IMG/VR virus record: IMGVR_UViG_3300017917_000952
Coordinates: 1-64,000 of that record
DNA: 64,000 nucleotides
Reading direction: 5' to 3' (one strand)
Shown here piece after piece: positions 41-20,145 of this stretch. The notes beneath the pieces were generated by a model that was given only the letters and a program-made list of their open reading frames with translations, searched no databases and was not told where the DNA came from. Position numbers and translations under genes: made by a program. Within the stretch, counting starts at the first letter, position 1. Each line of letters starts with the position of its first letter.

Positions 41-97
41 GGTTAAAATAATTTCAATAGTGCCATCTCCTTCTGTTTTCATGTGTTAAATATGCAC

Positions 98-1477
98 ATG
101 GCAAACTTAGGAAATTTAATCAAGCTCAATCGCAACCAATCGAAGGTCGCTATTATTGACGAAGATGCTCGCGTAACCTATAGACAATTGCATAATATGT
201 CTAACTATGCCGCATTTCATCTCAAATCAAAAGGTATTGCACCCGGTGACAGAGTAGCCATTAAAGGTGTTAATACCATAGGCTATGTAGCGGCATATTT
301 AGGAATTTTAAAACTAGGAGCCGTAGCGGTTCTCATAAATGTAAAACTTCCACAATCGCAGGTTGAGTTTATTTTAAAAGACAGCAATGTTAAATTTTTA
401 TGGGAAGATCCAAAAATCCCTAGCGATGTGTTTGTTGAATTTACTCCACACGAAGCTCAGGACAGTGACCCGGCTATTGTAATGTATACATCGGGTTCTA
501 CAAGCCAACCCAAAGGAGTCATTCTTCCGCATAGCCACAAATGGATTATTGAAAAGAAATCAAATTATCCGGCGGCTGTTCATAGGAGAGCGATTGTTGC
601 CGCACCATTATATCATATGAATGGCCTAAGCAATACCGAAACTACACTAAGCGGCCACGGTACTCTTATTCTTTTAAAAAGATTTGACCCGATACAATTC
701 TTAAAAAGAATAGCCTACCACCGAGTAAATTCTATTACATCTGTTCCTACGATGTTGGCATTGATACTTCAACATCAAGATGTAATGAAAAAATTAGATC
801 TAAAATGTGTTACACATATTGGAATGGCTTCTGCACCTGTTAGCAGACATTTATTTGAATCTCTAAAGGCTGCATTTCCAAAAGCAGTAATCAACAATGC
901 TTATGGAATAACTGAAGTTAGTCCGGGAATGTTTGGAAGGCATCCGACTCTACCCACGCCCGATATGAGTGTTGGATATCCAATACCTGGAATTGAATAT
1001 AGGCTAGTAGACGGAATTCTACAGGTAAAGAGTCCATCTATGTTCTTAAAATATAATAACCTAGCAACAAAAAACATAACCGAAGATGGGTTTTTTATCA
1101 CAAATGATTTGTTCAAAATAGACGAAAACGGGTTTTACTTTTTCTTAGGCCGCGCCGATGACATGTTTGTTAGCGGCGGGAATAATGTATACCCCCGTCA
1201 ATTAGAGTCAGTATTAGAAGAACACCCGTTAGTCAAACAAGCGGCAGTCATTGGCCTAGAAGATGATATTAAGGGGATGAAACCGTACGCATTTGTGGTA
1301 TCTACTGCCGGCGAGGACGAACTAAAAAGACATGTATTAGAATCGTTGCCGCCGAGTCATTGTCCTAGAAAAATTTGGTCGGTTATGACGATGCCACTAA
1401 CCAGCGTAAACAAAATAGATAAAAATGCACTAAAGAATCAAGCAAAAGAGTTATTAAATGTTGTTCAACAGAATTGA
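98..1477 (+). CDS. AMP-binding acyl-CoA synthetase (adenylate-forming enzyme)
   Basis: YTSGSTSQPKG AMP-binding loop, YGITE, FITNDL, GRADD and C-terminal NKIDK lysine. Start placed at ATG 98, 5 nt after TTAAATA (track start 83). Confidence 0.9.
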   Translation: MANLGNLIKLNRNQSKVAIIDEDARVTYRQLHNMSNYAAFHLKSKGIAPGDRVAIKGVNTIGYVAAYLGILKLGAVAVLINVKLPQSQVEFILKDSNVKFLWEDPKIPSDVFVEFTPHEAQDSDPAIVMYTSGSTSQPKGVILPHSHKWIIEKKSNYPAAVHRRAIVAAPLYHMNGLSNTETTLSGHGTLILLKRFDPIQFLKRIAYHRVNSITSVPTMLALILQHQDVMKKLDLKCVTHIGMASAPVSRHLFESLKAAFPKAVINNAYGITEVSPGMFGRHPTLPTPDMSVGYPIPGIEYRLVDGILQVKSPSMFLKYNNLATKNITEDGFFITNDLFKIDENGFYFFLGRADDMFVSGGNNVYPRQLESVLEEHPLVKQAAVIGLEDDIKGMKPYAFVVSTAGEDELKRHVLESLPPSHCPRKIWSVMTMPLTSVNKIDKNALKNQAKELLNVVQQN

Positions 1478-2195
1478 GAATCTTAACGGTCAGGTAGCCG
1501 TAATTACCGGAGCCAACGGCGGTGTCGGGTTTGCTGTTGCAGAAAGACTAGCAAAGTCGGGTGCTCAGATTATCGGAATAGTTAGACGCAACGTAGAAGA
1601 AATGCAGGCAAGGTTAGATCAACTAGGGCCAGGTCATAGAGCCCTATTAGCGGATGTAACTAGCAGCGAACAATTAATATCGGCGGCGGCCCAGATCACA
1701 CAGTGCGATATACTTATTAATAATGCCGGCGCTTCTACTCCTATCGATCATAAAAATTTAACCTCGCTGACGGACGAAATTTTTGAAAACGTAGTAAAGG
1801 TTAATCTAAACGGCGTATTTTACACTACTAAGGCATTTTTACCTCTCCTACGAAAGAGTCAGAATGCACTGGTTGTTAATATAAGTTCGGCTAGTAGTAT
1901 ACGAACAGGCGGCAGCAATGTTGCCTATGCAGCCGCAAAAGCAGGGGTTGACTCATTGACTAGAAATTTAGCAAAGGCCCTTGCTCCAATTAGAGTAGTA
2001 AGTTTAAATCCTACACTTATAAAAACTAATTTTACACAAATGCCAGACTCTTATTACCATAACGCAGGTCTAGGAACTCCATTAAAACGAGTAGTTACTG
2101 TAGAAGATGTTGCATCAACTGTAGAGGCACTGGCAACTACAGTGAGATTTGTAACCGGCAACAACATTGTCATTGACGGAGGAAGAACACTATGA
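1458..2195 (+). CDS. Short-chain dehydrogenase/reductase (SDR)
   Basis: TGANGGVG Rossmann motif, NNAG, catalytic S and YAAAK, IDGG C-terminus. Confidence 0.92.
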   Translation: MLFNRIENLNGQVAVITGANGGVGFAVAERLAKSGAQIIGIVRRNVEEMQARLDQLGPGHRALLADVTSSEQLISAAAQITQCDILINNAGASTPIDHKNLTSLTDEIFENVVKVNLNGVFYTTKAFLPLLRKSQNALVVNISSASSIRTGGSNVAYAAAKAGVDSLTRNLAKALAPIRVVSLNPTLIKTNFTQMPDSYYHNAGLGTPLKRVVTVEDVASTVEALATTVRFVTGNNIVIDGGRTL

Positions 2196-3064
2196 CTACA
2201 ATTATAACCTGTGCTATAACAGGAGCGGTCACTAGTAGAGATCAAACTCCGTATCTTCCAGTGACTCCTGAAGAGATTGCAATTAGCGCACTTGAAGCAG
2301 CAGAAGCCGGCGCGGCAGTAGCGCACATACATGTTCGAGATCCCGAAACAGGAAAACCGAGTATCAATGTAGAGTACTACAGAGATACAGTTGATAGAAT
2401 TCGTAAACAAAATAAAGACCTTTTGATTAACTTAACGACTGGGCCTGGCGCATTTTATTTGCCAAGTTTTGGTGTTAACCTAGCACAAGGTGCTCCAGGA
2501 ACTTTACTACTAGGCGCCGCAAAACGTGTAGAGCATATTCAGTTAATTAAACCCGATATCTGTAGTTTAGATTTTAATACCATGCATCAGGCCGGAGACG
2601 GTATCAGAATAAACCATAAACGTGTTACTAGAGAAATGCTAAGGTTAGTTCAAGAAGCAGGTACGAAACCAGAGTTAGAGATCTTTGATAGCGGAGACCT
2701 TCGCATAGCACAAGAGTTTGTTGCAGAAGGATTGGTAAAAGGTAAACCATTTTGGCAATTTGCCATGGGCGTTAAATATGGCTGGGGCGCAAGCACCAAT
2801 GCACTACAATATGCTTACAGAGAACTAACACCGGGATCGTTGTGGAGTGCCTTTGGCATAGGAAAAGAACAGATGCCATTTGTTGCACAGACAATGTTGT
2901 TAGGTGGGCATGTTAGGGTAGGCATGGAAGATAATATCTACACCAGTAAGGGAGTGTTAGCAAAAACTAATGCAGAATTGGTTAGTATGGCCGTTGACAT
3001 TATCAGACTATTAGGAGGCAAGGTTGCATCCTATCAAGAAGCAAGGGAAATTTTATTACAATGA
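2192..3064 (+). CDS. Beta-keto acid cleavage enzyme (BKACE/Kce, DUF849)
   Basis: ITCAITGA start, PVTPEEIA, AGAAVAHIHVRD zinc motif, PELEIFD, GGHVRVGMEDN. Confidence 0.9.
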   Translation: MTTIITCAITGAVTSRDQTPYLPVTPEEIAISALEAAEAGAAVAHIHVRDPETGKPSINVEYYRDTVDRIRKQNKDLLINLTTGPGAFYLPSFGVNLAQGAPGTLLLGAAKRVEHIQLIKPDICSLDFNTMHQAGDGIRINHKRVTREMLRLVQEAGTKPELEIFDSGDLRIAQEFVAEGLVKGKPFWQFAMGVKYGWGASTNALQYAYRELTPGSLWSAFGIGKEQMPFVAQTMLLGGHVRVGMEDNIYTSKGVLAKTNAELVSMAVDIIRLLGGKVASYQEAREILLQ

Positions 3065-3843
3065 CACAAGAAAGATTAGATACTAGACAGTCCTATTTCT
3101 ACAGGGATCATACCGGGATACGAAGAAGATACGGAATATACATGCCTGCTATTGATAGATTCCTGCATGTGTCAGAACAAGATTTATGGATGAGTCTCGA
3201 AACTGCTGAGATTCTAAGTTCCAAAGTACAAACTATGCTATATGTGCTGCCCCCTGGTTACATAAAAGTTCCCGAGTATACCGAACTTATTAATAATCAA
3301 AACTGTCTCAATTGGGGCATCTATGACAAGTCAAAATTAAAGATAGGTTCCGGCAGTGCGCTAGGTGCCAGACAGACTCCTATTATAGGTATGCTTTATC
3401 CTGATGATCGATTAGAAGAACATCAGTCTCTTCCAGAAGACTTTATCGAAGATAGTTCTATACTAATAGGTTTGAAAGACTATGCAGATTATGTATATCG
3501 AAGAGTTTTAGGAATTAGCATTGCAGTGAATTTTTATAATCCGTATTTCTCAAAGAAATTTATAGAAAAATATATCGACAATGATTGGGTAGAAAATAAA
3601 GAAAATTCAGCAGACCCTTCCTTTTCAAAAGGTATTGAATTTGAAATTAAGAAAATACTTTACCAGTGCAACTCTAAGGAAGAAGCCGAAGAAGCAATTA
3701 CTAATTTCTGGCTCGAAAATTATAGAAACGTAGGATTTATTATGGTAGGATATTATAAGGTAATCGGAGAAAGAATCCCAGAAAAACTAAGACCATACGC
3801 TTCAAATATTCACTATCTTAACCATTCAGTGTGGGTCATATAA
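3061..3843 (+). CDS. Hypothetical protein, coupled to the downstream PP-loop ATPase gene
   Basis: 260-aa ORF overlapping both neighbours; no motif recognised. Confidence 0.7.
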   Translation: MTQERLDTRQSYFYRDHTGIRRRYGIYMPAIDRFLHVSEQDLWMSLETAEILSSKVQTMLYVLPPGYIKVPEYTELINNQNCLNWGIYDKSKLKIGSGSALGARQTPIIGMLYPDDRLEEHQSLPEDFIEDSSILIGLKDYADYVYRRVLGISIAVNFYNPYFSKKFIEKYIDNDWVENKENSADPSFSKGIEFEIKKILYQCNSKEEAEEAITNFWLENYRNVGFIMVGYYKVIGERIPEKLRPYASNIHYLNHSVWVI

Positions 3844-5102
3844 TGCTTAATATAAACGATACACTTTATTTTTCAAGCCATGTTGTGAATTGGTATACTA
3901 GAGATACTTGGGATAAGGTATACAAAAACGTCCCTCCAGACGGTCAATGGTACCTAAAGGTGTACGAAAAGGTCTTACCTAATCGATTAATAACAAGGAA
4001 TGGGGAGTGGACTACTCCGTGGCCCCAGGAACTAATTCCTAAATTTAAGATGCCCGAGTACGATCCTTACTTTAGTAAATCGTTCGAACAGGTGACAGAT
4101 GAAAACGCTCTACGGATAAGGGATAGAATTCTCCAAGGAGAAAAGTTTGCCGTCATGTATTCGGGGGGTATTGATAGTACACTAGTTCTTTCATCGTTGA
4201 TTAAAAATCTTAGCAGTGAAGAATTAGAAAATGTAACTGTAGTTTGTAGTGGAGAAAGCATTGCCGAGAACCCTGTGTTCTATAGTAAGTTCATTCACGA
4301 AAAAATGAAAACCCTAGATTCTAAACGACACAAATATGATGACCTGATTAATCTAGGTTTGACTCCTATTATTTCAGATGAAGGAGATTGTATTTTTGGA
4401 ACACTTATCGGGCTCAATATGTACAACAGTTTTGATGCCTTAGTTGATCACGTATCGGGTCCCGTAAAAGAAAATCTAAGGCTTCTAAAAGATAAAATTA
4501 GCGATCCCAGTGTTCATTACAGTACATTTAAAGACCTAATTATTAAATTTTTGGATTTACCGCATTCACCGACATTTGGTAGAATTCTGTACGACAAATA
4601 TGATCATAATATAAGAACTGCAACAGTTCCTGTTCATAGTCTCCATGATTTTTTCTGGTGGTTAATTTTCAACGTTAAATATTACAATTGTTCCGTTAGG
4701 GGTGCAATATATATCAACGATACTATAGATATCAACACAGCCGTTCACAGAATCCATAATTGGTTTAATGATGAAGATTACCAACGATGGAGTATGGCAA
4801 ACAATAACAATGGAACAAAAATTAAAAAAAGTATCCTCAGTTATAAAACGGCGGCTAAAGAATATATCTACTCCGTTGATAACAATATTTGGTACAGAAC
4901 CTTTAAGACAAAATTAGAGTCCCTGTGGAATATAAGTAACTTGCAAAATGTACAGAATATTCCGATGGAAAAAAGGCCTGTAGCAAGGATAGCAGTTAAA
5001 AAAGAAAACTGGGAATTGGTGCATCTTACTGACCCGGGGGTGGTTGAGTATTTTACTCATCATGCATCAAATTATAAAATAGATTGGACAGACATCAAAT
5101 GA
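3831..5102 (+). CDS. PP-loop ATPase (asparagine synthase C-domain / adenine nucleotide alpha-hydrolase-like)
   Basis: MYSGGIDST PP-loop and SDEGDCIFG; no N-terminal glutaminase Cys. Confidence 0.7.
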   Translation: MGHIMLNINDTLYFSSHVVNWYTRDTWDKVYKNVPPDGQWYLKVYEKVLPNRLITRNGEWTTPWPQELIPKFKMPEYDPYFSKSFEQVTDENALRIRDRILQGEKFAVMYSGGIDSTLVLSSLIKNLSSEELENVTVVCSGESIAENPVFYSKFIHEKMKTLDSKRHKYDDLINLGLTPIISDEGDCIFGTLIGLNMYNSFDALVDHVSGPVKENLRLLKDKISDPSVHYSTFKDLIIKFLDLPHSPTFGRILYDKYDHNIRTATVPVHSLHDFFWWLIFNVKYYNCSVRGAIYINDTIDINTAVHRIHNWFNDEDYQRWSMANNNNGTKIKKSILSYKTAAKEYIYSVDNNIWYRTFKTKLESLWNISNLQNVQNIPMEKRPVARIAVKKENWELVHLTDPGVVEYFTHHASNYKIDWTDIK

Positions 5103-6004
5103 AAAAATTTTTAGCAACCTTATTATTAGCAACTACAGCATTTGTGGCACATGCTAAAGAAAATATTACAATTTTCTATGCATGGGGTCCAGGTGACTCT
5201 GTAGCAAACTATCATCGCACTATCGCTGCTGAAGCAAACAAAATTCAAGACAAATACAATTTTATCTTTGATACCAAGCCAGGCGCAGGTGGTGCAATCG
5301 CATCTAACCACGTACTTAATACTCCTAACAGTGTATTGGCACATAGCACAGCATTTTTTGTGCGTCCTGTAGTGTTCCCTAACGAAAGTTATGATTTAAC
5401 AAAATACAAAGAACAATATGTTCACTGCATGGCCCCAATGGCTGTGACTAGTACAAAGTATAAAACTGTAAAAGATGTACCTGCCAACGCTAGTGTAGGT
5501 ATTAGCGGCCTAGGTGTTACTACACACTTAGCAGCACTAGAACTAAAGAAACGTTATCCGGATTTAAATATCGTTCCTTTTAAATCTACCAACGATAGTA
5601 TGTTAAGTATGGTAAGCGGTCAAACTGATCTACATATTGGATTTATCAGCGAAGCAGAACAATGGAGTAAAGAAAACTCTAACAGTGATCGTAAGGTAAA
5701 TGTTTTAGGTATTACTGGATCAAAAGTTGTTAATGGTTACCAACCGTTGGTTCGTCAAGGCTTCGACGCTAGTTTTGCCGACATGAATGTTGGACATCAT
5801 CTCCTAGTACCAACAACAGTCAGCGAAGAAAAGCGCAAAGAGTTTCACGCCATTTTTGCTCGTGCAGCCCAGGCTCCTAGCGTTCGTGCTGCCTATGCAG
5901 TTGACTACTGCGAACCACAGGCTGTTACCTATGACGGTTTAGACAAGTTCTTCTTGTTCCATACAAACTATTGGAAGAAGTTAGCATCTGCGGTTAAACT
6001 ATGA
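5084..6004 (+). CDS. Bug/TctC-like tripartite tricarboxylate transporter substrate-binding protein
   Basis: Signal peptide (MKKFLATLLLATTAFVAHA, likely start about 5099), KPGAGGAIA, GVTTHL, VPFKS. Confidence 0.8.
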   Translation: MDRHQMKKFLATLLLATTAFVAHAKENITIFYAWGPGDSVANYHRTIAAEANKIQDKYNFIFDTKPGAGGAIASNHVLNTPNSVLAHSTAFFVRPVVFPNESYDLTKYKEQYVHCMAPMAVTSTKYKTVKDVPANASVGISGLGVTTHLAALELKKRYPDLNIVPFKSTNDSMLSMVSGQTDLHIGFISEAEQWSKENSNSDRKVNVLGITGSKVVNGYQPLVRQGFDASFADMNVGHHLLVPTTVSEEKRKEFHAIFARAAQAPSVRAAYAVDYCEPQAVTYDGLDKFFLFHTNYWKKLASAVKL

Positions 6005-6894
6005 TTAAGAAATTAATTATTGGAGTTCTAGGGGCATTGGCTATTTCGGCCAATGCTGCCGAAACTATTAAGGTATACAGTCCTTACAGTGCGAGCCACA
6101 GCGGTACTCCTGCATTGTTACGAGTGTTAGACCAAGCAAACGCAAATCAAAATATCTATAAATTCGTTCCAGAATTTAAACCGGGCGGAAATCAGATCAT
6201 CGCTGTAAAAAGTGTAGATGCAAATAGCCTGGCAATTATTGCACCTGCGTTTGTTGAGAATGTAGAATCGGGTAAACTTAATGAGTCTGACTATGTTCCA
6301 GTTTATGCACTCGGTGATGCCTGCTGGGCTGTGATCACAAACGGACCTTTAGAAGGTGCTAAGGAAGTTACAGTCGGCGGGGTTGGATTTGGCAATGCTG
6401 CACACTTAACAGCACTAGCATTAGGCGAGAAGTTTAAGTTTAACGTTCGTTATATTGTTTTTAGATCTAACAACGATGCACTGGTTAACATGACTGGAAA
6501 CAACGGTGTAGAATTTGTTGTTGAAAAATACGAAAGTTACGAAGGATTAAAAACTAAAAATCCTAATCTAAGAGTTATTGCTGCTAGTTGTCCTAAGAGA
6601 TTACCCCAGGCACCAAAAGTAAAAACACTCAAGGAAATGGGAATAGAAGCACCCTATGTCTTCAACATCATTGTATCTAACAGAGAAATGCCCAGTGGTC
6701 GTAGGTTAGCAATTTCAAAAATCTTAAATGACGCTACTCTAGCACTAGGCGAAGAAGAAATTTTTAAAATCTCTGCAATGCGTCCTCCTGTGTTCGATGG
6801 TGTCACTGCTGAAGATTTTTATGTAAAATCTACAGATCTTGTCAAAAATCTTCAGAAAAAGTATAGGTCTAAGATTGAAGAATCCAAAAAGTAA
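6001..6894 (+). CDS. Bug/TctC-like substrate-binding protein (divergent)
   Basis: Signal peptide ...AISANA, KPGG, GFGNAAHL, KRLPQAPKVKTLKEMG. Confidence 0.75.
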   Translation: MIKKLIIGVLGALAISANAAETIKVYSPYSASHSGTPALLRVLDQANANQNIYKFVPEFKPGGNQIIAVKSVDANSLAIIAPAFVENVESGKLNESDYVPVYALGDACWAVITNGPLEGAKEVTVGGVGFGNAAHLTALALGEKFKFNVRYIVFRSNNDALVNMTGNNGVEFVVEKYESYEGLKTKNPNLRVIAASCPKRLPQAPKVKTLKEMGIEAPYVFNIIVSNREMPSGRRLAISKILNDATLALGEEEIFKISAMRPPVFDGVTAEDFYVKSTDLVKNLQKKYRSKIEESKK

Positions 6895-6931
6895 CTAAAT
6901 ATATGAGCATGAAAGGTTCATGCTCATTTTT
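6895..6931 (+). terminator. Terminator hairpin directly downstream of a late-promoter-like CTAAATA
   Basis: ATGAGCATGAA-AGG-TTCATGCTCAT (6903-6927) plus T run; CTAAATA at 6895-6901. Confidence 0.75.
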
Positions 6932-6956
6932 AACGTTATAAAATGGAGCCTAAACA

Positions 6957-7904
6957 ATGACAAAAAAGCACGTAAAATGGGTTATCGCCCATGAGCCTAT
7001 TGGATTATTCCTAAAGGTAGCAGAGCGTTTTGCTAAGGAAGTAAACGAGCAGACCAACGGTATGTTCGATATCGAAGTTCTTTCTCTAAGCGATTATTCT
7101 GCAAAGTACAATGATGGTAAGAAAATTACCAAAGACGACCTAATGAAGTTAGTAGATACTGGCGCAATCGAAATGAGCCACATCTACACAACATGGTTAG
7201 CAGACTACAACAAAGATCTACACGCATTAGATCTACCTTTCTTATTCCGTGATCACGCACACGCTGACGCAGTTCTAGAAGGCGAAATCGGTGCAGAGCT
7301 TCTAGCAGGTGTTTCTAAGAACAGCAACATCAAGGCTATGAGTTTCACATATAGCGGTGGCTATCGTGTTGTTCCTGCAAACTTTGCAGCAGACACAGTA
7401 GAAGCATGGCAAGGTAAGAAAGTTCGTACCAGCCGTAGCCCAGTTGCAGTCGACACATTCAAACTGCTAGGCGCACAACCTTTTGAAGGTATTGCTTTAG
7501 AAGAAATGAATCAGGCTGCTGACCAAGGTATTATTGAAGCAGGCGAGAGCACATACGTTCGCGTATTCCCTCTAGACCAGCATAAGAGCTTCGAAGTTGT
7601 TAACGACACAGCACACAGCCTATTCTTAACAAGCATTATTGTTAACCAAGATTTCATGGCTCAGTTCAGCCAAGAAGTTCAAGAAGTTCTTGCAACAGCC
7701 GCATTCAATGCAGCACGTCAAGAGCGTCGCGAAAGTGTTGCTAACATTCCTGAAATCCTAGAACTTTGCGAAAAAGAAGGTGTTCAGGTTGTTAAGATGA
7801 GCGCAGAAGAAGAGTGCAAGTTCAAGGCAATCACAAGTCAGGTTTATGACATGTATGCCGACTATTTCACTCCCGGCTTAGTCCAGAAGATTCAGTTACA
7901 GTAA
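6957..7904 (+). CDS. dctP: TRAP transporter DctP-family substrate-binding protein lacking a signal peptide
   Basis: FAKEVNEQTNG, ALDLPFLFRD, GKKVRT with the conserved Arg, GIIEAGE; GGAG RBS at 6945-6948. Confidence 0.85.
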   Translation: MTKKHVKWVIAHEPIGLFLKVAERFAKEVNEQTNGMFDIEVLSLSDYSAKYNDGKKITKDDLMKLVDTGAIEMSHIYTTWLADYNKDLHALDLPFLFRDHAHADAVLEGEIGAELLAGVSKNSNIKAMSFTYSGGYRVVPANFAADTVEAWQGKKVRTSRSPVAVDTFKLLGAQPFEGIALEEMNQAADQGIIEAGESTYVRVFPLDQHKSFEVVNDTAHSLFLTSIIVNQDFMAQFSQEVQEVLATAAFNAARQERRESVANIPEILELCEKEGVQVVKMSAEEECKFKAITSQVYDMYADYFTPGLVQKIQLQ

Positions 7905-7921
7905 TCTGTACTTAATCAAGT

Positions 7922-7942
7922 AAAGGGCCATATGGCCCTTTT
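7922..7942 (+). terminator. Terminator / perfect 20-bp palindrome
   Basis: AAAGGGCCAT|ATGGCCCTTT just after the dctP stop. Confidence 0.8.
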
Positions 7943-7957
7943 CTTACGAGTATACCC

Positions 7958-7965
7958 TATAAATA
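7958..7965 (+). promoter_or_regulatory. T4-type late promoter TATAAATA
   Basis: Exact T4 late consensus, 4 nt before ATG 7970. Confidence 0.65.
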
Positions 7966-7969
7966 ATTC

Positions 7970-8569
7970 ATGTGGATGCCTGTTGATTTTAAAGAAATTG
8001 GAAAAATAGATCCGGAAATATTAAATCCGGTTATAGAACTATTTGATACAATAAACTGGAATGATTTTTCATACAGACGTCCAGAACCTAAACTGCGTGC
8101 CGGAAAATTACTGGCTTTGCCTTACCTGTTATACAAATATGATCATCCTGTTTATACCGAAGAGCAGCAGATGATAATTAAGGCCGTGGAACCAGTAGTA
8201 GATGAGATTATTAAACTATTCCCCGGTTATGTAAAAGTTCGCGGAGAAATTGCAACATTATTACCGGGGGTTGAATTACCTTTACATACTGATATTGTTT
8301 GGTTTCATAAGTATTGTAGGCGAATACACATTCCTATAATAACTAACAAGGACTGTTACCAACAATTTGAAAATAGAACTTCTCATTTAGAGTTTGCAAA
8401 AATATACGAGATTAATAATAGAATAATGCACGGTGCTGGTAATCTCGGAAACAGCCAACGCATACACTTAATCCTTGACTTGCTCAGTGACAACATCTAT
8501 AATATAATTGATAAAAAAGTATATCAACTTATGACGGCGCTGCCAAAAAATGAAGTCAAAATTTATTAA
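7970..8569 (+). CDS. Aspartyl/asparaginyl beta-hydroxylase-like 2OG-Fe(II) oxygenase
   Basis: LPLHTD (HxD), RRIHIPIITN, EINNRIMHGAGN, RIHLILD. Confidence 0.8.
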   Translation: MWMPVDFKEIGKIDPEILNPVIELFDTINWNDFSYRRPEPKLRAGKLLALPYLLYKYDHPVYTEEQQMIIKAVEPVVDEIIKLFPGYVKVRGEIATLLPGVELPLHTDIVWFHKYCRRIHIPIITNKDCYQQFENRTSHLEFAKIYEINNRIMHGAGNLGNSQRIHLILDLLSDNIYNIIDKKVYQLMTALPKNEVKIY

Positions 8570-9098
8570 CGCATATATGAATGTGGCAAAAGAGTTTGCC
8601 AATCTAAGCCATGCACGACGATTACACGTCGGTGCTATTGTAGTCAAAGACGACCGTATCATCAGCATCGGCTACAACGGTATGCCTGCCGGTTGGGATA
8701 ACGACTGTGAATACAAAGATTACTGCCTAAGCAAAGATCTCAATGGAAATTATTTTCCAGGGGCGGAAGAAGAATATCCGTTTGTAGAAGAAGAACACGG
8801 TCCATATTACGAGTATACTCGTCGGTACCGTCTTAAAACCAGACCAGAGGTATTACATGCAGAATCAAACGCTATTGCAAAACTGGCGAAGTCTAATGAC
8901 AGTGGTGATGGGGCTGACTTATTTGTTACTCACAGTCCTTGTATCGAGTGTGCCAAACTCATTTATCAGTCAGGCATTCGTCGTGTTTATTTTGGTGAAC
9001 ACTATCGCGACGATGCTGGGATTGAATTCCTCAAGAAGTCGGGCGTGGAGGTAGTACAACCCCAACTAGGTGAATCCGAGGAACCTCAGAGCAATTAA
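8550..9098 (+). CDS. dCMP deaminase
   Basis: VGAIVVKD, GYNG, HAESNAI and SPCIECAK zinc motifs. Confidence 0.93.
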   Translation: MKSKFINAYMNVAKEFANLSHARRLHVGAIVVKDDRIISIGYNGMPAGWDNDCEYKDYCLSKDLNGNYFPGAEEEYPFVEEEHGPYYEYTRRYRLKTRPEVLHAESNAIAKLAKSNDSGDGADLFVTHSPCIECAKLIYQSGIRRVYFGEHYRDDAGIEFLKKSGVEVVQPQLGESEEPQSN

Positions 9099-9570
9099 TA
9101 AATGTGTGCTTCTTTGTTGTATCTACATAGTAACTAGTGCCGTCAGCGGGCATGTGCTCTATAGAATTCTGTTCCGGAAAAATCATTAAACATTGGGGAT
9201 TAGTAATCACTGGTAAATGTATCCTAGGATACGGATCAGAATGTATGCTGTAGCAGGCCCTGGGATTCATGTACATTAATCTTGTTCTAACAATCCTATA
9301 CTCACTAAGTGATTGCAACCATTGATCAACAAAACCGCCCCGTAGTTTAGGGTGAATAAATTTATACTGGGGCTCTACTATCATTCCTCCGGTTTTTCTT
9401 ATTCTGCCGGTTGACTCGTAGAACTGCTCTATGCTATCATTGTTAGGATCTTTCACCTGCAGGCCTAACTGCATAACGTTTTCTCTAAACGGAAAATTTT
9501 TGATTAGGTCGTTTATTTCGCTAACTAAGTTATAGAAATTCTCAAACTTCTTGATAGGCGTACAGATCAT
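9031..9570 (-). CDS. Aspartyl/asparaginyl beta-hydroxylase-like 2OG-Fe(II) oxygenase
   Basis: YSIHSD, RIHLPVITN, DTTKKHTFIN, RIHLV. Start placed at 9570, 5 nt after TTAAATA on the minus strand. Confidence 0.75.
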   Translation of the reverse strand: MICTPIKKFENFYNLVSEINDLIKNFPFRENVMQLGLQVKDPNNDSIEQFYESTGRIRKTGGMIVEPQYKFIHPKLRGGFVDQWLQSLSEYRIVRTRLMYMNPRACYSIHSDPYPRIHLPVITNPQCLMIFPEQNSIEHMPADGTSYYVDTTKKHTFINCSEVPRIHLVGVVLPPRPTS

Positions 9571-9609
9571 ATCAATATTTAATAACATTCTAACATAAGG
9601 AAAAAATAG

Positions 9610-10536
9610 ATGAACTTAAAACCCCTAGTTGCAGCACTAGTTACTGCATTTACACTTCAAGTCGGCATTGCTAATGCAGAATTTAATCCTGTAGGTAAAC
9701 AGGTTAATGTTATCATTCCGTTTGCGCCAGGCGGCGGAGTAGATCAGACATTTAGACATCTTCAGACTTATGCTTCAAAGAAAGGCGTTAATCTTGTCGC
9801 AATTTATAAACCGGGTGCAGAAGGGCTGATCGCAATGAGCGAATTAGTTACCAAACCTGCAGACGGAATGACCGTTAGTGTTACTACAGCAGGCGTTATT
9901 GCCAATTACCGATTAAAGAATCCGTCTACAGATGTAGTTGCTATCTCTGGTATTCGAGACAGTATCATGGCCTTGGTTGTTAGTAATAAGAGCCAAATTG
10001 AAAGTCTAGACCAATTAGACAAAGATCTTAAAGAAGGTAAAAAACTAAATGTAGGATATGGTGCACCAGGGCAGCAGATGTTCTTAGAGCAGTTCTTTGA
10101 ATTAGCAAAGGCAAAGAAAGGCGTTGCCATGGTTCCTTATAAGGGCGGCGGGCCGGTTGTTACTGACCTACTAGGCGGGCATATTGATGTTGCAGCAGTA
10201 CCGTTATCAATTGTTAAGGCACATATCGATTCTGGAAAAGTAAAATTAGTAGGATTAGCCAGCAGAGCAAAGATAGAAGGTTATGATTCTACTCCGCTAA
10301 TGAAGGCCAAGTATCCAAAATGGGAAGAGTTTGATAACTTTGCAGTTGTTGCCGAAAAAGGCACAGACAAAGAAGCCATTAATTGGTGGTCTAATTTCTT
10401 AAAAGATTATATCAATGACGAATCTGTTAAGAAGGATTTTGTCAAAGACATGACTGTACCTGTCGAGTTTGGTGCAACTAACCTAGAAAAAACAATTCAG
10501 TCTAGCATGAATAGACTTAAAAAGAATGGAAATTAA
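9610..10536 (+). CDS. Bug/TctC substrate-binding protein
   Basis: Signal peptide, IIPFAPGGGVD, KPGAEG, VPYKGGGPVVTDLLGGHID. Confidence 0.9.
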   Translation: MNLKPLVAALVTAFTLQVGIANAEFNPVGKQVNVIIPFAPGGGVDQTFRHLQTYASKKGVNLVAIYKPGAEGLIAMSELVTKPADGMTVSVTTAGVIANYRLKNPSTDVVAISGIRDSIMALVVSNKSQIESLDQLDKDLKEGKKLNVGYGAPGQQMFLEQFFELAKAKKGVAMVPYKGGGPVVTDLLGGHIDVAAVPLSIVKAHIDSGKVKLVGLASRAKIEGYDSTPLMKAKYPKWEEFDNFAVVAEKGTDKEAINWWSNFLKDYINDESVKKDFVKDMTVPVEFGATNLEKTIQSSMNRLKKNGN

Positions 10537-11862: not shown

Positions 11863-13293
11863 ATGCAGATTGTAATTTTAACCGGCGGAACTGATAACCG
11901 AAGATTTCTAAGGTACTTAGGTCCTTATCAAATAGCATGGTGGATGCGTGAACATGGATATTCTGTTCAGGTACTAGATTTTTTATTTTTTCTTCCTAAG
12001 GTGGAGAGAATAAATCTCCTAAGAAAATTTATAACAAAAGAAACAAAAGTAGTTTCAGTTGCCCCCTTTGCATACTTGGACTGGCATCACGACAGTGCTC
12101 TGGCTCCTATTATAAGTTTATTCCAAGACATAAAATACGAATTTCCTTGGGTCAAAATATCTGTAGGCGGGCAGTTTGCTACTAATTTTTTAAAGAAAAA
12201 AGTTTATACAAGACTAAAGTATAAGGTTGATGCAGTATTCCAAGGACCAGGAGAACATTCTTATCTAGACTATTGTAACTACATTTTTGGAAAGTCAGAT
12301 AAACACCCGGCATTCAAACTTATAGATGACCATAAAGTATTCGAATCCTCAGTAGAGTATGATGTACAAAACTGTAGAATGAGATTTTCTACTCAAGATT
12401 TTATTCTACCCGGAGAAGCATTACCAATCGAATTAAGTCGTGGATGTATTTTCAAATGTGCATTCTGTCAGTATCCTAACTTAGGCAAAGACAAAGACGA
12501 CTTCAACAGGAAGATTGAGAATATCCGAGATACCATGATTCATAATTATGAAAATTTCGGGACCACAGAATATTACATAGCAGACGATACAATTAACTCA
12601 CATAGGCAACGGACTAAAGATCTGCACGAAATGTCTAAAACATTACCTTTCAAATTAAATTACATAGGGTATGTAAGATTAGACCTGTTAGACATTTGGC
12701 CCGAGCAGCAAGAGATATTGCCAGAGTCGGGACTGGTTAGTTGCCACTTTGGAATAGAATCACTAGATCCTTACTCTTGCAAACAGATAGGCAAAGGTTG
12801 GGGAGCGAAGAATCACAAAATATGGATTCCTAAGATCGCAGAAATGTGGAAAGATACTGTGTCAATAAGATGTTCATTAATTGCAGGCCTTGGGAAAGAA
12901 ACAGAAAAAGACTGGAATGAAACAATGGAGTGGTTTAAAACTACCGGTGTAAAAGATTGGTTCTATAACCTACTGGTCCTAAGGAAAGAAATTGACCTAA
13001 GTCTTTTTGAAAAGAATCCCGAAAAGTACGGTTACAAATTTGATAGCAAAGGTAATTGGTATACAGATACAATGACCTATTATAGAGCAAAGGAATGGCA
13101 AACACTTAACTACTATAGTAATCTGTCTTTAAGATATGCTACCACATGGGATTACATAGGACTAAGAAACTTAGGATTCAGCAAAGAACAACTTAATACT
13201 GAAAAGTTTGGGTCCATGATTAAAGCCGTTGCAGCAAGAACTCAAGCCCGAGACTTTGCTAAACGTTACTACCAACTGGCAATGAGTTATTAA
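11863..13293 (+). CDS. B12-binding radical SAM protein
   Basis: SRGCIFKCAFC CxxxCxxC motif, N-terminal cobalamin-binding-like domain (ISVGG), DDT, GIES, LIAGL. Confidence 0.85.
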   Translation: MQIVILTGGTDNRRFLRYLGPYQIAWWMREHGYSVQVLDFLFFLPKVERINLLRKFITKETKVVSVAPFAYLDWHHDSALAPIISLFQDIKYEFPWVKISVGGQFATNFLKKKVYTRLKYKVDAVFQGPGEHSYLDYCNYIFGKSDKHPAFKLIDDHKVFESSVEYDVQNCRMRFSTQDFILPGEALPIELSRGCIFKCAFCQYPNLGKDKDDFNRKIENIRDTMIHNYENFGTTEYYIADDTINSHRQRTKDLHEMSKTLPFKLNYIGYVRLDLLDIWPEQQEILPESGLVSCHFGIESLDPYSCKQIGKGWGAKNHKIWIPKIAEMWKDTVSIRCSLIAGLGKETEKDWNETMEWFKTTGVKDWFYNLLVLRKEIDLSLFEKNPEKYGYKFDSKGNWYTDTMTYYRAKEWQTLNYYSNLSLRYATTWDYIGLRNLGFSKEQLNTEKFGSMIKAVAARTQARDFAKRYYQLAMSY

Positions 13294-16530: not shown

Positions 16531-17985
16531 ATGATACTAGGTATTAACGGTCAGAATCATGATGCAAGCATGGCCTTGGTAGATCAAGAATCTATCTTAT
16601 GGGCTGCACACGCAGAACGGTATTCTAGAACTAAAAACGATAAACTCCTTAATACTGATATGATTAAGGAAATGTACGAGTACGGTGCTCCAAAGGTTGC
16701 GGTATGGTTTGAAAAACCTTTCTCAAAGTCTATGAGAAAACTTTACAGCGGAGAACGACCCTGGTGGTGCAATCCTAAGGAAGAACTAAAGCGTGTCGGT
16801 CTAGGTCATCTAAGCCTAGAAAAAGTAGGACACCACGAAAGTCATGCAGCCGCAGGATTCTATACAAGTAAGTTTCAAGATGCGGCAATTCTTGTAGTAG
16901 ATGCAATAGGAGAATGGGACTCTGCCAGTATGTGGCACGGAACAGCCTACGGTCTTAATAAAATCTGGGATATGAAATATCCAGACAGCATGGGGTTATT
17001 CTACACAGCATTTACACAGTTCTTAGGACTGAAACCCAACGAAGAAGAATATATCTTAATGGGTATGGCTGCACTAGGCAAGCCTATAGTTGTAGAACAA
17101 ATTAAAAAAGATTTCTTTGATAGTTTTGGTCCACCGTTTATTAAATTAAAACACAATTTACATAGAGGTTGTCGTTGGTGGGAAGCACCTAAGGGCGTGA
17201 CTAATTTTGATATTGCAGCCAGTGTTCAATACATAATGGAAGAATATCTCTTAGATACCGTTGCTGCCCTAAGATCAAATGTAGCCAGTGATAATTTAGT
17301 ATTCATGGGCGGTGTTGCTCTTAACTGTGTTGCAAATAGTATCATTGCAAAACAAAAATATTTTAAAAATATTTGGGTAATGCCTAATCCTGGCGATGCA
17401 GGCAGTTCTATTGGTGCGGTTGCAGCGTTAGAAAGAAAGCACCTCGACTGGCGACATCCTTATCTAGGCACCTCTATTAATCGTGTATTAGATATAGAAG
17501 GCGTTGTTAAAGAACTTATGGCAGGTAATGTTGTTGCAGTCGCTAATGGTCGGGCAGAATTTGGGCCAAGGGCATTGGGTAATAGAAGTTTACTCTGCGA
17601 TCCTCGTGGCCCGGACGCTAAGGCCAGAATGAATAGGTTAAAGCGAAGGGAAGAATTTAGACCCTTTGCTCCTGCTATCCTAGAGGAACATGCACATTAT
17701 TATTTTGATATGGTTGTACCTACTAGTCCATACATGCAGTTTGTTATGCGGTGCAAGGATCCTAAGAATTTCCCGGGTATTTGCCACTACGACAATACCA
17801 GTAGGGTGCAGACAGTTAACCACGCAGATAATCCAAATTTTAGGGCTATTTTGGAATTATGGTACGAAAAAACCGGTTGTCCGATGCTTATGAATACTAG
17901 TCTAAATGTAAAAGGCGAGCCCTTGGTAAATAGTTTAAGCGATGCTGTACGTTGGGAAAAGTTAAATGGCGTAAAAGTATTTTGA
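16531..17985 (+). CDS. O-carbamoyltransferase (NodU/CmcH/TobZ family)
   Basis: HDAS, ERYSR, HHESHAAAGF, GGVALNC, GDAG, GRAEFGPRALGNRS, KRREEFRPFAP, LMNTSLN. Confidence 0.95.
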   Translation: MILGINGQNHDASMALVDQESILWAAHAERYSRTKNDKLLNTDMIKEMYEYGAPKVAVWFEKPFSKSMRKLYSGERPWWCNPKEELKRVGLGHLSLEKVGHHESHAAAGFYTSKFQDAAILVVDAIGEWDSASMWHGTAYGLNKIWDMKYPDSMGLFYTAFTQFLGLKPNEEEYILMGMAALGKPIVVEQIKKDFFDSFGPPFIKLKHNLHRGCRWWEAPKGVTNFDIAASVQYIMEEYLLDTVAALRSNVASDNLVFMGGVALNCVANSIIAKQKYFKNIWVMPNPGDAGSSIGAVAALERKHLDWRHPYLGTSINRVLDIEGVVKELMAGNVVAVANGRAEFGPRALGNRSLLCDPRGPDAKARMNRLKRREEFRPFAPAILEEHAHYYFDMVVPTSPYMQFVMRCKDPKNFPGICHYDNTSRVQTVNHADNPNFRAILELWYEKTGCPMLMNTSLNVKGEPLVNSLSDAVRWEKLNGVKVF

Positions 17986-19028: not shown

Positions 19029-19879
19029 TATTAAATATGCCAGGGACAGCCGGAAGTGCAAAGATTACTATGAGACCACTATTAACAGAAAAAAAATTAG
19101 GCATTATTGGATTAGGATTCGTCGGAGGTGCAATTAAAGCATCACTTGACTGGGGTGACGAAATTTGGGTTGTTATTGATCCTGCTAAAGGATTTAATGC
19201 AACCTATCAAGAACTAGCAGAAAAAACAGACGGCGTGTTTGTCTGTGTGCCTACTCCTATGGGAGATGACGGCGTCTGCGATACCAGTTATTTAGAAGAT
19301 GTTCTTAAAAATCTAAAGTCTGTGAACTATGAAGGCGTTATTATCAGCAAATGTACAGCACCTCCTTCTGTTTACGAACGGTTAAACAAGGATCATCCCA
19401 ACCTTGTACATGCACCAGAATTTTTAACTGCCGCAAACGCAAACAGAGACTACGTTAATGGGCAATTTGCAATCATTGGCGGTCGAGTGAATGCCTACAT
19501 CCGAGAAGCAGAACGCATTATTAAAATTACTCAAACTAATTTAAAAGATGTTATGCACTGCACCATTGGCGAAGCCGCATTAGCAAAATATACTATCAAT
19601 AGTTTCCTGGCTACCAAAGTTGCGTTTATGAACGAAGTTTATGAAATTGCACAGGCAGCAAACATGGACTATGATAAGATCGCGCATATGGTAACTTTAG
19701 ATCCTCGCATTGGACGCACCCACATGCAGGTCCCAGGACCCGACGGGCAGTTTGGGTTTGGCGGGGCCTGTTTTCCTAAGGATACCAGTGCATTGCTGAA
19801 ATATGCAGAAAGTCTAAACCAAACACCTATGGTATTAGATGCCGCTGTGAAAAAGAATACCCTACTACGCTTAAAGTGA
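19025..19879 (+). CDS. UDP-glucose/GDP-mannose dehydrogenase family protein (short form)
   Basis: GLGFVG, VCVPTP, PEFL, AKYTINSFLATKVAFMNE, GFGGACFPKD; lacks the C-terminal UDP-binding domain. Confidence 0.88.
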   Translation: MILNMPGTAGSAKITMRPLLTEKKLGIIGLGFVGGAIKASLDWGDEIWVVIDPAKGFNATYQELAEKTDGVFVCVPTPMGDDGVCDTSYLEDVLKNLKSVNYEGVIISKCTAPPSVYERLNKDHPNLVHAPEFLTAANANRDYVNGQFAIIGGRVNAYIREAERIIKITQTNLKDVMHCTIGEAALAKYTINSFLATKVAFMNEVYEIAQAANMDYDKIAHMVTLDPRIGRTHMQVPGPDGQFGFGGACFPKDTSALLKYAESLNQTPMVLDAAVKKNTLLRLK

Positions 19880-19884
19880 GAAAT

Positions 19885-20145
19885 ATGGAAAAAGAAATCC
19901 TTGATGAAGTTATTCGTTTAGTTGGAAAGATTAAAAAAGATCTTCCAAAAGAAAAAATTGTACCAACTGCTGAATTTGTTAAAGATTTAGAATTTGACAG
20001 TCTGGATATTACAGAACTTGTTATCGATCTTGAAGACGAGTTTCATTTCGACTTAGCAGAAAAGAACGCTAAGGGCGTGGTTACAATTCAAGATTTGGTT
20101 AATACAATTCTAAAATTAGTTGACAAATCTAAAGTTAGTAACTAA
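19885..20145 (+). CDS. acpP: Acyl carrier protein
   Basis: DLEFDSLDITELVIDLEDEF with the phosphopantetheine Ser, and TIQDLV. Confidence 0.88.
   Translation: MEKEILDEVIRLVGKIKKDLPKEKIVPTAEFVKDLEFDSLDITELVIDLEDEFHFDLAEKNAKGVVTIQDLVNTILKLVDKSKVSN

What the first reader, a model, noticed from the sequence alone, without database searches (positions are those of the whole stretch)
6957..7904. DctP homologue without a signal peptide: a possible cytoplasmic ligand sponge
Seen: the protein starts directly at the mature-domain strand (MTKKHVKWVIAHEP) behind a good GGAG RBS. The nearer upstream ATG at 6943 is out of frame. Its three Bug neighbours all have signal peptides. It keeps the carboxylate-binding Arg (GKKVRT), is flanked by hairpins on both sides, and appears by eye to favour C-ending codons. 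Known: DctP proteins are periplasmic, and several phage anti-defence proteins act by sequestering small molecules. Inference: a highly expressed cytoplasmic binder for a metabolite or immune signal.
Basis: partly seen in the sequence, partly recalled or inferred. Interest (0 to 1): 0.72.

Follow-up and report, generated by a model that had tools for sequence, protein, structure and literature searches.

The report
Cytoplasmic DctP-fold protein in a phage
A freshwater jumbo phage encodes a well-folded relative of bacterial periplasmic TRAP nutrient-binding proteins that has no export signal, and it belongs to a large signal-less clade (phages, predatory bacteria) usually encoded next to an asparagine-synthetase-like enzyme, which suggests a job inside the cell in a small-molecule pathway, not transport or an immune-signal sponge.

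Summary
ORF 6957-7904 is a 315-aa DctP-family protein (Pfam E 5e-40; AF2 pLDDT 97.5; TM 0.86-0.9 to TRAP binding proteins). It starts four residues before the first mature-domain strand, with an in-frame stop two codons upstream, a GGAG RBS and terminator-like hairpins on both sides. Its three Bug/TctC neighbours have classic signal peptides.

This is not a local truncation. About 50 IMG/VR loci and 120 protein clusters share the signal-less start, and a well-supported 66-member clade is signal-less throughout. That clade includes Bdellovibrionota and Proteobacteria MAGs.

No DctQ/DctM was found in the phage record or in four of five MAGs that carry the family.

Gene context does not suggest a sponge. 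In 35 of about 47 viral loci the gene abuts a PP-loop (SGGIDS) protein with weak structural likeness to the asparagine-synthetase synthetase domain. The window's set of AMP-ligase, SDR, BKACE, a 260-aa protein, the PP-loop protein and DctP recurs at 26-65% identity in three MAG contigs.

Best reading: a cytoplasmic ligand-binding (possibly catalytic) component of an acid-activating pathway. The ligand is unknown. The anti-defence sponge idea is untested and has no positive support. It is a new variant of a known kind and moderately interesting.

The parts
6957..7904 (+). DctP-fold protein without a signal peptide (315 aa), the subject of the finding
   Evidence: Pfam PF03480 E 5e-40. AF2 pLDDT 97.5. 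Foldseek TM 0.86-0.9 to TRAP binding proteins. In-frame stop two codons upstream.
6945..6948 (+). GGAG ribosome-binding site, 8 nt before the ATG
   Evidence: Sequence. A GGAG/AGGAG at the same spacing is present in nearly all related loci.
6903..6927 (+). Upstream terminator-like hairpin (11 bp stem) followed by a T run; it ends the Bug gene unit
   Evidence: dG -13.8, z -4.8. Also listed by the scan.
7918..7945 (+). Downstream terminator-like hairpin (GC-rich 8 bp core) followed by TTTTCTT
   Evidence: dG -15.2, z -3.55.
3843..5102 (+). PP-loop (SGGIDS) protein with a weak asparagine-synthetase synthetase-domain likeness and no glutaminase domain; the conserved partner gene of the DctP-fold protein
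   Evidence: Directly adjacent on the same strand in 35 of about 47 viral loci. HMM hit in 41 of 52 viral loci. Weak Pfam Asn_synthase hit at the PP-loop. AF2 pLDDT 89; weak Foldseek hits to AsnB, TsnB9, carbapenam and beta-lactam synthetases, McjC and LarE.
3061..3843 (+). 260-aa protein of unknown family that accompanies the long form of the PP-loop gene
   Evidence: jackhmmer hits in 7 viral and 5 MAG loci, where coordinates were listed directly upstream of the PP-loop gene. No Pfam or PHROG match.
83..1477 (+). AMP-binding (adenylate-forming) enzyme of the shared cassette
   Evidence: Pfam. 38-44% identical to the copies in L068, L116, L070 and L029. Commonest neighbour family in the MAG loci, 15 loci.
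1458..2195 (+). Short-chain dehydrogenase/reductase of the cassette
   Evidence: Pfam. 43-53% identity to the cassette copies.
2192..3064 (+). Beta-keto acid cleavage enzyme (BKACE) of the cassette
   Evidence: Pfam E 1.7e-94. 59-65% identity to the cassette copies.
5099..6004 (+). Bug/TctC-like periplasmic binding protein with a signal peptide (weak TctC match)
6001..6894 (+). Bug/TctC-like periplasmic binding protein with a signal peptide
9610..10536 (+). Bug/TctC periplasmic binding protein with a signal peptide
19876..20145 (+). Phosphopantetheine carrier protein (possible partner of the AMP-binding enzyme; link inferred only)
   Evidence: Pfam PP-binding E 2.8e-7. A carrier protein sits between the DctP gene and the AMP-ligase gene in L068.

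Best explanation
The gene encodes a cytoplasmic member of the DctP (TRAP solute-binding) fold family. It belongs to a distinct subfamily with an N-terminal [KR]-W-[VL]-[IL]-A-H-E-P motif that is not coupled to TRAP membrane subunits.

Within that subfamily a large clade lost the signal peptide long ago. That clade is now spread through freshwater T4-like and jumbo phages, Bdellovibrionota and some Proteobacteria.

The protein most likely binds a small anionic (carboxylate-bearing) metabolite in its cleft and works together with the neighbouring PP-loop, asparagine-synthetase-like enzyme. Enzymes of that class adenylate a carboxyl group and convert it to an amide. The DctP-fold protein would serve either as the substrate-capturing and presenting component or as a catalytic partner.

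In this phage the pair sits in a transferable cassette with an adenylate-forming ligase, an SDR and a beta-keto-acid cleavage enzyme. Three exported Bug proteins could capture an acid outside the cell for import by host permeases.

Shown: fold, absence of a signal peptide, clade structure, gene linkage, and no TRAP membrane genes found in the sequences searched. Inferred: location, ligand class, and cooperation with the PP-loop enzyme.
For: Fold and family.

No signal peptide here or in relatives:
- Upstream frames are open for only 0-18 codons in about 50 viral loci, with a conserved RBS.
- The top 120 clusters are nearly all 314-316 aa, and the longer calls carry unrelated, non-hydrophobic extensions.
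- A signal-less clade of 66 rows has support 97. Three rows scored 'SP' look like ORF-extension artefacts of my ORF caller.

Not a TRAP subunit:
- No DctM, DctQ or TctA in the 206-kb record.
- None is listed in any Pfam-annotated context.
- MAGs G001-G004 have 1-3 family members each but no DctM. In G005 the two DctM genes sit beside conventional DctP genes, away from the copies of this subfamily.
- The canonical TRAP Arg is kept in only 54 of 104 subfamily members, against 96.8% of TRAP binding proteins (PMC5812351).

Partner gene:
- The PP-loop gene is adjacent on the same strand in 35 of about 47 viral loci.
- It scores as an HMM hit in 41 of 52 viral and 8 other loci. These include high-GC MAG contigs L071 and L081, where the order is DctP, 262-aa protein, PP-loop, flanked by AcrB pumps and an amidase.
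- P0172, in a second signal-less clade, is followed by a 571-aa Asn_synthase.

PP-loop nature.

Shared six-gene cassette with L068, L116, L070 and L029. Those MAGs have no T4-type terminase.

Conservation:
- The DctP gene averages 78% identity across loci where the PP-loop gene averages 30%.
- 62 of 315 positions are at least 99% invariant in 169 close relatives.
- The invariant polar residues (H12, R137, E197, R202, H220, E256, R257) are equally conserved in signal-less and signal-bearing members.
Against: - No ligand or activity was tested.
- Complex prediction for the DctP and PP-loop proteins gave no answer.
- In this window the two genes are 1.86 kb apart, with two Bug genes and a terminator between them.
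- The partner is not universal. The MFS-linked group (L072, L076 and others) and the distant phage group (L055-L058) show no PP-loop HMM hit.
- The PP-loop protein's similarity to Asn synthetase is weak (TM 0.3-0.38, E about 1e-3).
- In the commonest phage lineage the pair lies among tail-fibre genes with a radical SAM enzyme and a 2OG oxygenase, which could mean a protein substrate.
- Signal peptides were judged by hydrophobicity and by eye, not by SignalP.
Confidence: 0.5

Rival explanations
1. Anti-defence sponge. An abundant cytoplasmic binder sequesters a host immune second messenger or another small molecule needed by a defence system.
For: No signal peptide and no transporter partner. 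Own RBS and terminators on both sides. Mild bias towards C-ending codons. Relatives' transcripts appear in metatranscriptome assemblies. The family is virus-enriched in the ESM Atlas.
Against: The conserved neighbours are enzymes, not anti-defence genes. The same signal-less protein, with the same invariant polar residues, sits in MAG contigs and in a chromosomal operon context. The whole chain is explained by the TRAP binding-protein fold. From my own knowledge, the known sponges (Tad1, Tad2, Acb2) are small oligomers of unrelated fold. No binding test was possible.
Confidence: 0.07
2. The DctP-fold protein is itself an enzyme (a binding-protein fold recruited for catalysis, as in THI5/NMT1-type proteins), acting on an intermediate of the cassette.
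For: There is an unusually large set of invariant polar residues (H12, S133, R137, E197, T199, R202, H220, E256, R257) across 104 members at about 30% mean identity, while the canonical TRAP Arg is dispensable. It is always embedded among enzymes.
Against: The overall fold is indistinguishable from ligand-binding TRAP proteins. Invariant cleft residues are equally expected for one conserved ligand. There is no precedent in the DctP family that I know of.
Confidence: 0.15
3. Part of a protein- or peptide-modifying module. The AsnB-like enzyme (a relative of the lasso cyclase McjC), a radical SAM enzyme and Asp/Asn-hydroxylase-type oxygenases modify a peptide or a tail-fibre protein, and the DctP-fold protein holds the carboxyl-bearing substrate.
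For: In the commonest lineage the order is tail fibre genes, radical SAM (weak SPASM), a conserved 105-aa protein, DctP, PP-loop, 2OG oxygenase, then more tail genes. The window has two Asp_Arg_Hydrox genes and a radical SAM gene nearby. McjC is among the structural matches.
Against: The cassettes in the MAG contigs contain small-molecule enzymes (SDR, BKACE, AMP-ligase, carrier protein, MBOAT) and no tail genes. DctP-type proteins are known to bind small organic acids.
Confidence: 0.15
4. It is still a periplasmic TRAP binding protein. It is exported by a non-classical route or from a mis-called start, and it feeds the host's DctQM permease as an auxiliary uptake gene, like phage PstS.
For: It belongs to a transporter family and keeps the Arg. 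It sits beside exported Bug proteins.
Against: There are stops directly upstream in this and about 50 related loci, with a conserved RBS at the short start. The same genome uses ordinary signal peptides for its Bug proteins. Four of five MAGs that carry the family showed no DctM. Signal-bearing relatives exist and form separate branches.
Confidence: 0.05

Closest known systems
DctP-type TRAP transporter solute-binding proteins (e.g. SiaP, DctP, IseP; Pfam PF03480)
   Same: Sequence family and fold: Pfam E 5e-40 and TM 0.86-0.9 to solved TRAP binding proteins. It also keeps two Arg residues, 20 residues apart (R137 and R157), matching the spacing of SiaP R127 and R147 as I recall it.
   Different: No signal peptide. 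No DctQ/DctM in the record, and none found in most MAGs that carry the family. It scores below the TIGR00787 cut-off (118 vs 175 bits). The subfamily keeps the canonical Arg in only about half of its members and has its own invariant set (W8, H12, P14, S133-G-G, R137, E197, R202, H220, E256, R257). It is linked to enzymes instead of permeases.
Orphan Bug/TctC binding proteins of Betaproteobacteria (PMC5812351)
   Same: Binding proteins far outnumber, or entirely lack, their membrane partners and sit next to catabolic enzymes. Three such genes flank this one.
   Different: Bug proteins are a different family, and the ones here are exported. This protein is not.
Binding-protein folds recruited to the cytoplasm (THI5/NMT1 pyrimidine synthase, LysR effector domains); from my own knowledge
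   Same: A periplasmic-binding-protein type II fold working inside the cell as an enzyme or ligand sensor.
   Different: Different sequence families. I know of no DctP-family example, and four full-text searches on this question found none.
Phage small-molecule sponges (Tad1, Tad2, Acb2); from my own knowledge
   Same: A phage-encoded soluble binder with no enzymatic domain recognised.
   Different: No fold or sequence relation. Orthologues occur in MAG contigs inside biosynthetic-looking operons. There is no anti-defence neighbourhood.
Asparagine synthetase B-like amidoligases without a glutaminase domain (beta-lactam synthetase, carbapenam synthetase, TsnB9, McjC); applies to the partner gene
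   Same: PP-loop SGGxDS motif and weak structural likeness of the synthetase domain.
   Different: Very divergent (TM under 0.4), no Pfam family, shorter, and every homologue in the database is unannotated.

Membership tests
DctP family (Pfam PF03480), as a fold and sequence family | Significant match to the family profile over its full length | tested here: met
   138 bits vs a cut-off of 23.4, profile positions 13-283 of 286. NCBIfam NF037995 108 bits vs 50.
DctP family (Pfam PF03480), as a fold and sequence family | Two-lobed type II binding-protein fold with the long spanning helix | tested here: met
   AF2 pLDDT 97.5. Foldseek TM 0.86-0.9 and rmsd 2-3 A to more than 50 TRAP binding proteins.
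Functional TRAP transporter P subunit | N-terminal signal peptide or lipobox for export | tested here: not met
   The protein starts 3 residues before strand 1, with stops directly upstream. The same holds in about 50 related loci. No SignalP run was possible.
Functional TRAP transporter P subunit | Cognate DctQ/DctM membrane genes adjacent or elsewhere in the genome | tested here: not met
   None in the 206-kb record, which is 58% complete. None in the annotated contexts. Not found in 4 of 5 MAGs carrying the family; MAGs may be incomplete.
Functional TRAP transporter P subunit | Conserved carboxylate-binding Arg in strand 6 | tested here: met
   R157 aligns with the Arg of 4ovr and is present in 167 of 169 close relatives. 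It is present in only 54 of 104 across the subfamily.
Functional TRAP transporter P subunit | Score above the TIGR00787 dctP trusted cut-off | tested here: not met
   118.2 bits vs 175.05.
Phage anti-defence small-molecule sponge | High-affinity binding of an immune signalling molecule | not testable with these tools
Phage anti-defence small-molecule sponge | Relation in fold or sequence to a known sponge family | tested here: not met
   The listed PDB matches are all TRAP binding proteins and they cover the whole chain. PHROGs gives only one family of unknown function.
Phage anti-defence small-molecule sponge | Phage-restricted gene in an anti-defence or early-gene neighbourhood | tested here: not met
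   Orthologues occur in MAG contigs, including a chromosomal operon context. The neighbours are metabolic enzymes or tail genes.
Asparagine-synthetase-like PP-loop amidoligase (partner gene 3843-5102) | PP-loop SGGxDS ATP-pyrophosphatase motif | tested here: met
   S107, G108, G109, D111 and S112 are invariant in 24 homologues.
Asparagine-synthetase-like PP-loop amidoligase (partner gene 3843-5102) | Significant match to the Asn_synthase profile or a clear structural superposition | tested here: inconclusive
   Pfam E 0.15, at the motif only. Foldseek E about 1e-3 and TM 0.3-0.38 to AsnB, TsnB9 and McjC.

The most novel reading that the evidence does not exclude
A large family of cytoplasmic DctP-fold proteins, carried by phages and predatory bacteria, has been uncoupled from TRAP transport. 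It acts as the substrate-capturing (or catalytic) subunit of a previously unannotated AsnB-like amidoligase. Together they make or remodel an unknown carboxylate metabolite during infection or predation. This would be the first intracellular, enzyme-coupled role for the TRAP binding-protein fold.
Probability: 0.35. Interest if true: 0.72.

Novelty: new variant of a known kind. Interest (0 to 1): 0.58.

Why it matters
TRAP binding proteins are textbook extracytoplasmic receptors. This clade has hundreds of members, and its closest ESM Atlas clusters are 81-100% viral. A clade that has no export signal, has no permease and is tied to an unannotated ATP-pyrophosphatase would add an intracellular use of the fold. 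It would also flag a widespread, wholly uncharacterised pathway shared by freshwater phages and Bdellovibrio-like predators.

There is a practical point too. Current pipelines label these genes 'TRAP-type C4-dicarboxylate transport system, periplasmic component', and viral AMG surveys would count them as uptake genes. That reading is probably wrong.

Tried and rejected
- Complex prediction of the DctP and PP-loop proteins: score 0.00, 'no answer'. It is not used as evidence either way.
- Reference phage genomes: no near-identical DNA, and only 21-24% identical DctP hits, mostly in contaminated or unannotated records.
- Bug protein in reference phages: one weak hit.
- PP-loop protein against PDB sequences: nothing.
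- T4 late-promoter motif TATAAATA: not enriched in the record (10 found vs about 26 expected on both strands).
- The TTAACGTTA motif upstream of the gene: not repeated in the window.
- The 202-aa gene upstream of DctP in the MFS-linked loci: unrelated to the 260-aa window protein and to the 203-aa neighbour in L057.
- Literature: four full-text searches on this question found no description of signal-less or phage DctP proteins. A search for Bdellovibrio with DctP and TRAP returned two papers that I did not read. 'DctP' also collides with dCTP in text search.
- GC-rich end of the record: Pfam gave nothing informative.
- Coordinates of the AF2 model could not be read in the script box. Cleft residues were therefore placed only by alignment and secondary structure, not by measured distances.

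Full report
**Setting.** The window is the first 64 kb of a 206,751-bp IMG/VR virus record, estimated 58% complete. It has T4-type tail-fibre genes and other phage families. Near-identical DNA occurs in pond, estuary, freshwater, wastewater and aquaculture metagenomes. Mean GC is about 40%.

**The observation.** ORF 6957-7904 (+) encodes 315 aa.
- Read in frame, a TAA lies two codons before the ATG and a further stop lies a few codons upstream. The only other ATG-started peptide in that frame lies inside the upstream hairpin and does not resemble a signal peptide.
- The ATG at 6943 is out of frame.
- GGAG lies 8 nt before the start.
- The protein matches Pfam DctP over profile positions 13-283 of 286 with residues 20-300 (E 5e-40). 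AF2 places strand 1 at residues 4-10. So it starts at the mature domain.
- The three TctC/Bug neighbours begin with textbook n-h-c/AXA leaders.
- Both flanking hairpins fold far better than shuffles and are followed by U runs.
- Preference for C-ending codons exists but is modest (z 1.4, rank 18 of 190).
- R157 in GKKVRT aligns with the Arg of solved TRAP binding proteins.

**Not a local truncation.**
- A word-indexed search found more than 2,250 relatives. The best 120 clusters are 81-100% identical and almost all 314-316 aa. The few longer calls carry dissimilar, non-hydrophobic extensions.
- 53 IMG/VR loci were fetched. In each locus whose match covers the N-terminus, the frame upstream of the shared start is open for only 0-18 codons and a GGAG-type RBS sits at the same spacing.
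- An exhaustive search of 50%-identity representatives found 151 families at E below 1e-30. All carry an N-terminal [KR]W[VL][IL]AHEP motif. About half have a signal peptide or membrane anchor and about half do not.
- On a tree of 167 members with leaders trimmed off, the window protein lies in a clade of 66 rows (support 97) that is signal-less throughout. The three apparent exceptions look like artefacts of taking the longest ORF. The sister branches are signal-bearing Bdellovibrionota proteins. A second signal-less clade occurs in Elusimicrobiota and Myxococcota.

**Not a TRAP subunit.**
- The record has no DctM, DctQ, TctA or MBOAT.
- None of the Pfam-annotated contexts of relatives lists DctQ or DctM.
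- Five MAGs that carry the family were searched whole. Four have one to three family members and no DctM. In the fifth, each of the two DctM genes lies beside a conventional DctP, away from the copies of this subfamily. MAGs may be incomplete.
- The protein scores below the TIGR00787 cut-off.
- The Arg that is kept in 96.8% of TRAP binding proteins (PMC5812351, read) is kept in only 54 of 104 subfamily members, although it is kept in 167 of 169 close phage relatives.
- The subfamily instead has its own invariant polar set (H12, S133, R137, E197, T199, R202, H220, E256, R257). This set is equally conserved in exported and non-exported members.
- By alignment and secondary structure these residues fall on the loops that line the cleft in SiaP-type proteins. 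That is an inference, because I could not read the model's coordinates.

**What it travels with.** Clustering all ORFs of the loci showed one dominant companion: the family of window ORF 3843-5102, present in 43 of 58 loci.
- It is immediately adjacent on the same strand in 35 of about 47 viral loci.
- A profile of the family hits 41 of 52 viral-type loci and 8 others.
- This protein has an invariant SGGxDS PP-loop and only a marginal Pfam Asn_synthase hit at that motif.
- It has no PDB sequence relative, and its database homologues carry no Pfam domain and are annotated, if at all, only as hypothetical proteins.
- Its AF2 model (pLDDT 89) weakly resembles the synthetase domain of asparagine synthetase, TsnB9, carbapenam and beta-lactam synthetases and McjC, and the PP-loop core of LarE and TilS.
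- Enzymes of that class adenylate a carboxyl group. This is established knowledge of the AsnB family.

**Two arrangements.**
- Type A (this window). A 260-aa protein, a long PP-loop protein (about 420 aa) and DctP, here with two Bug genes inserted, preceded by an AMP-binding enzyme, an SDR and a BKACE. The six proteins recur at 26-65% identity in phage locus L029 and in contigs binned to Pseudobdellovibrio/Bdellovibrio MAGs and an unclassified 504-kb contig (L068, L116, L070).
  - In L068 they are followed by a carrier protein, a second AMP-ligase, a weak DUF1574 match and an MBOAT (the MBOAT assigned by clustering with Pfam-annotated copies), which resembles a Dlt-type set.
  - Those MAGs contain no T4-type terminase.
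  - The core trio also occurs in high-GC Xanthobacteraceae and Burkholderiales MAG contigs, in L081 between AcrB pumps and an amidase.
- Type B (most IMG/VR loci, T4-like, contigs up to about 170 kb). Radical SAM, a conserved 105-aa protein, DctP, a short PP-loop protein and a 2OG oxygenase, set between tail-fibre genes.

Other contexts:
- The exported relatives in Bdellovibrionota sit with an AMP-ligase, a carrier protein, an MBOAT and an NMT1-type ABC system.
- A third signal-less group sits behind a Crp-type regulator, an MFS transporter and a 200-aa protein.
- P0172, from the second signal-less clade, is followed by a 571-aa Asn_synthase.

**Interpretation.** The evidence supports a cytoplasmic DctP-fold protein that belongs to an enzyme pathway rather than to a transporter. 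The most economical mechanism has two steps.
1. It binds a small anionic metabolite. The Arg pair R137/R157 is retained in this clade.
2. It works with the AsnB-like PP-loop enzyme, either presenting the acid for adenylation and amidation or acting on it directly.

In this phage the exported Bug proteins could capture an acid for host TctAB import, and the SDR, BKACE and AMP-ligase could process it. This relay is speculation. The DctP gene is far more conserved than its partner (78% vs 30% mean identity across loci), which points to strong constraint.

**The sponge idea.** It cannot be excluded, because no binding test was possible. Nothing positive supports it beyond the absence of a leader and hints of good expression.
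- Metatranscriptome assemblies from three studies contain contigs 85-95% identical to the gene, including a 935-nt contig spanning 6927-7857.
- Those runs were selected with this gene, RNA libraries may hold DNA, and the neighbouring genes are too divergent to map.
- This shows at most that relatives are transcribed.
- Orthologues with the same invariant residues in MAG contigs and chromosomal operons argue against a phage-specific counter-defence role.

**Novelty.** PHROGs holds only one distant family of unknown function for the DctP protein and none for its PP-loop, 260-aa, Bug or BKACE neighbours. The nearest ESM Atlas clusters are 81-100% viral. Source annotations call the gene a periplasmic TRAP component. 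Four full-text searches on this question found no description of signal-less or phage DctP proteins. I rate it a new variant of a known kind. The fold is ordinary; the location, the uncoupling from TRAP and the enzyme partnership are not.

**Limits.**
- Signal peptides were judged by hydrophobicity windows and by eye.
- All non-viral homologues are from MAGs, and mis-binned phage contigs are likely among them. The copies labelled Saccharibacteria and Nomurabacteria, 74-76% identical to the window protein, are probable examples.
- The tree is FastTree with midpoint rooting.
- Adjacency counts include related genomes.
- The ligand and any activity remain unknown.

Noticed in passing
window 83-7904; L068:271-10343; L116:6627-12749; L070; L029: A six-gene cassette (AMP-binding enzyme, SDR, BKACE, 260-aa protein, PP-loop protein, DctP-fold protein) is shared at 26-65% identity between freshwater phages and contigs binned to Bdellovibrio-like predators. 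In L068 it continues into a Dlt-like set (carrier protein, AMP-ligase, a weak DUF1574 match, MBOAT).
   Followed up: partly
window 5099-6004, 6001-6894, 9610-10536: The phage encodes three exported Bug/TctC binding proteins, but no TctA was found in the 206-kb record (TctB was not searched). PHROGs has no family for them. They may hijack host TTT permeases.
   Followed up: partly
G000:C1:195000-206751 (L145:3000-14752): The last 11-12 kb of the virus record has 46-53% GC against about 41% elsewhere. Its ORFs have no Pfam match except a weak AAA hit. It could be a foreign island, a mis-join or flanking DNA.
   Followed up: partly
L041:1732-5245, L042:3563-7076, L019, L028, L038: Some phages carry two or three PP-loop paralogues (three in tandem in L041 and L042), and some carry two DctP-fold genes in tandem (L019, L038; also L057 and L058). 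This suggests diversification of the pair.
   Followed up: no
window 7970-8569 (+), 9031-9588 (-), 8550-9098, 11863-13293, 16531-17985, 19025-19879: The region downstream of the DctP gene is dense in tailoring-type enzymes: two Asp/Arg-hydroxylase-like cupins, a dCMP/cytidine deaminase, a radical SAM enzyme, a carbamoyltransferase (43% identical to Ralstonia jumbo phage RsoM2USA) and a truncated-looking UDP-glucose dehydrogenase.
   Followed up: partly
window 38702-44731: A 2,009-aa ORF with only short PHROG matches (a tail protein C-terminus) lies in a stretch whose GC skew turns negative (38-44 kb) although the gene is on the + strand.
   Followed up: no
L088, L093, L094 (one MAG labelled Polynucleobacter); L066, L067 (MAGs labelled Saccharibacteria and Nomurabacteria): Short contigs with signal-less DctP genes are binned into MAGs of unrelated taxa. 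L066 and L067 (74-76% identical to the window protein) are probably phage contigs. The Polynucleobacter bin might hint at a host, and TTT/Bug-rich Betaproteobacteria would fit the Bug genes.
   Followed up: no
L003-L054, about 290-340 nt directly upstream of the DctP gene (e.g. L004:9656-9988): A conserved protein of about 105 aa of unknown family (motifs YPR, IP, W) sits between the radical SAM gene and the DctP gene in 33 loci. It could be a substrate peptide, a chaperone or a small subunit.
   Followed up: partly
window 7958-7965: A perfect T4 late-promoter-like TATAAATA lies just after the DctP terminator and 5 nt before the next gene's ATG at 7970. The motif is not enriched in the record overall.
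   Followed up: yes
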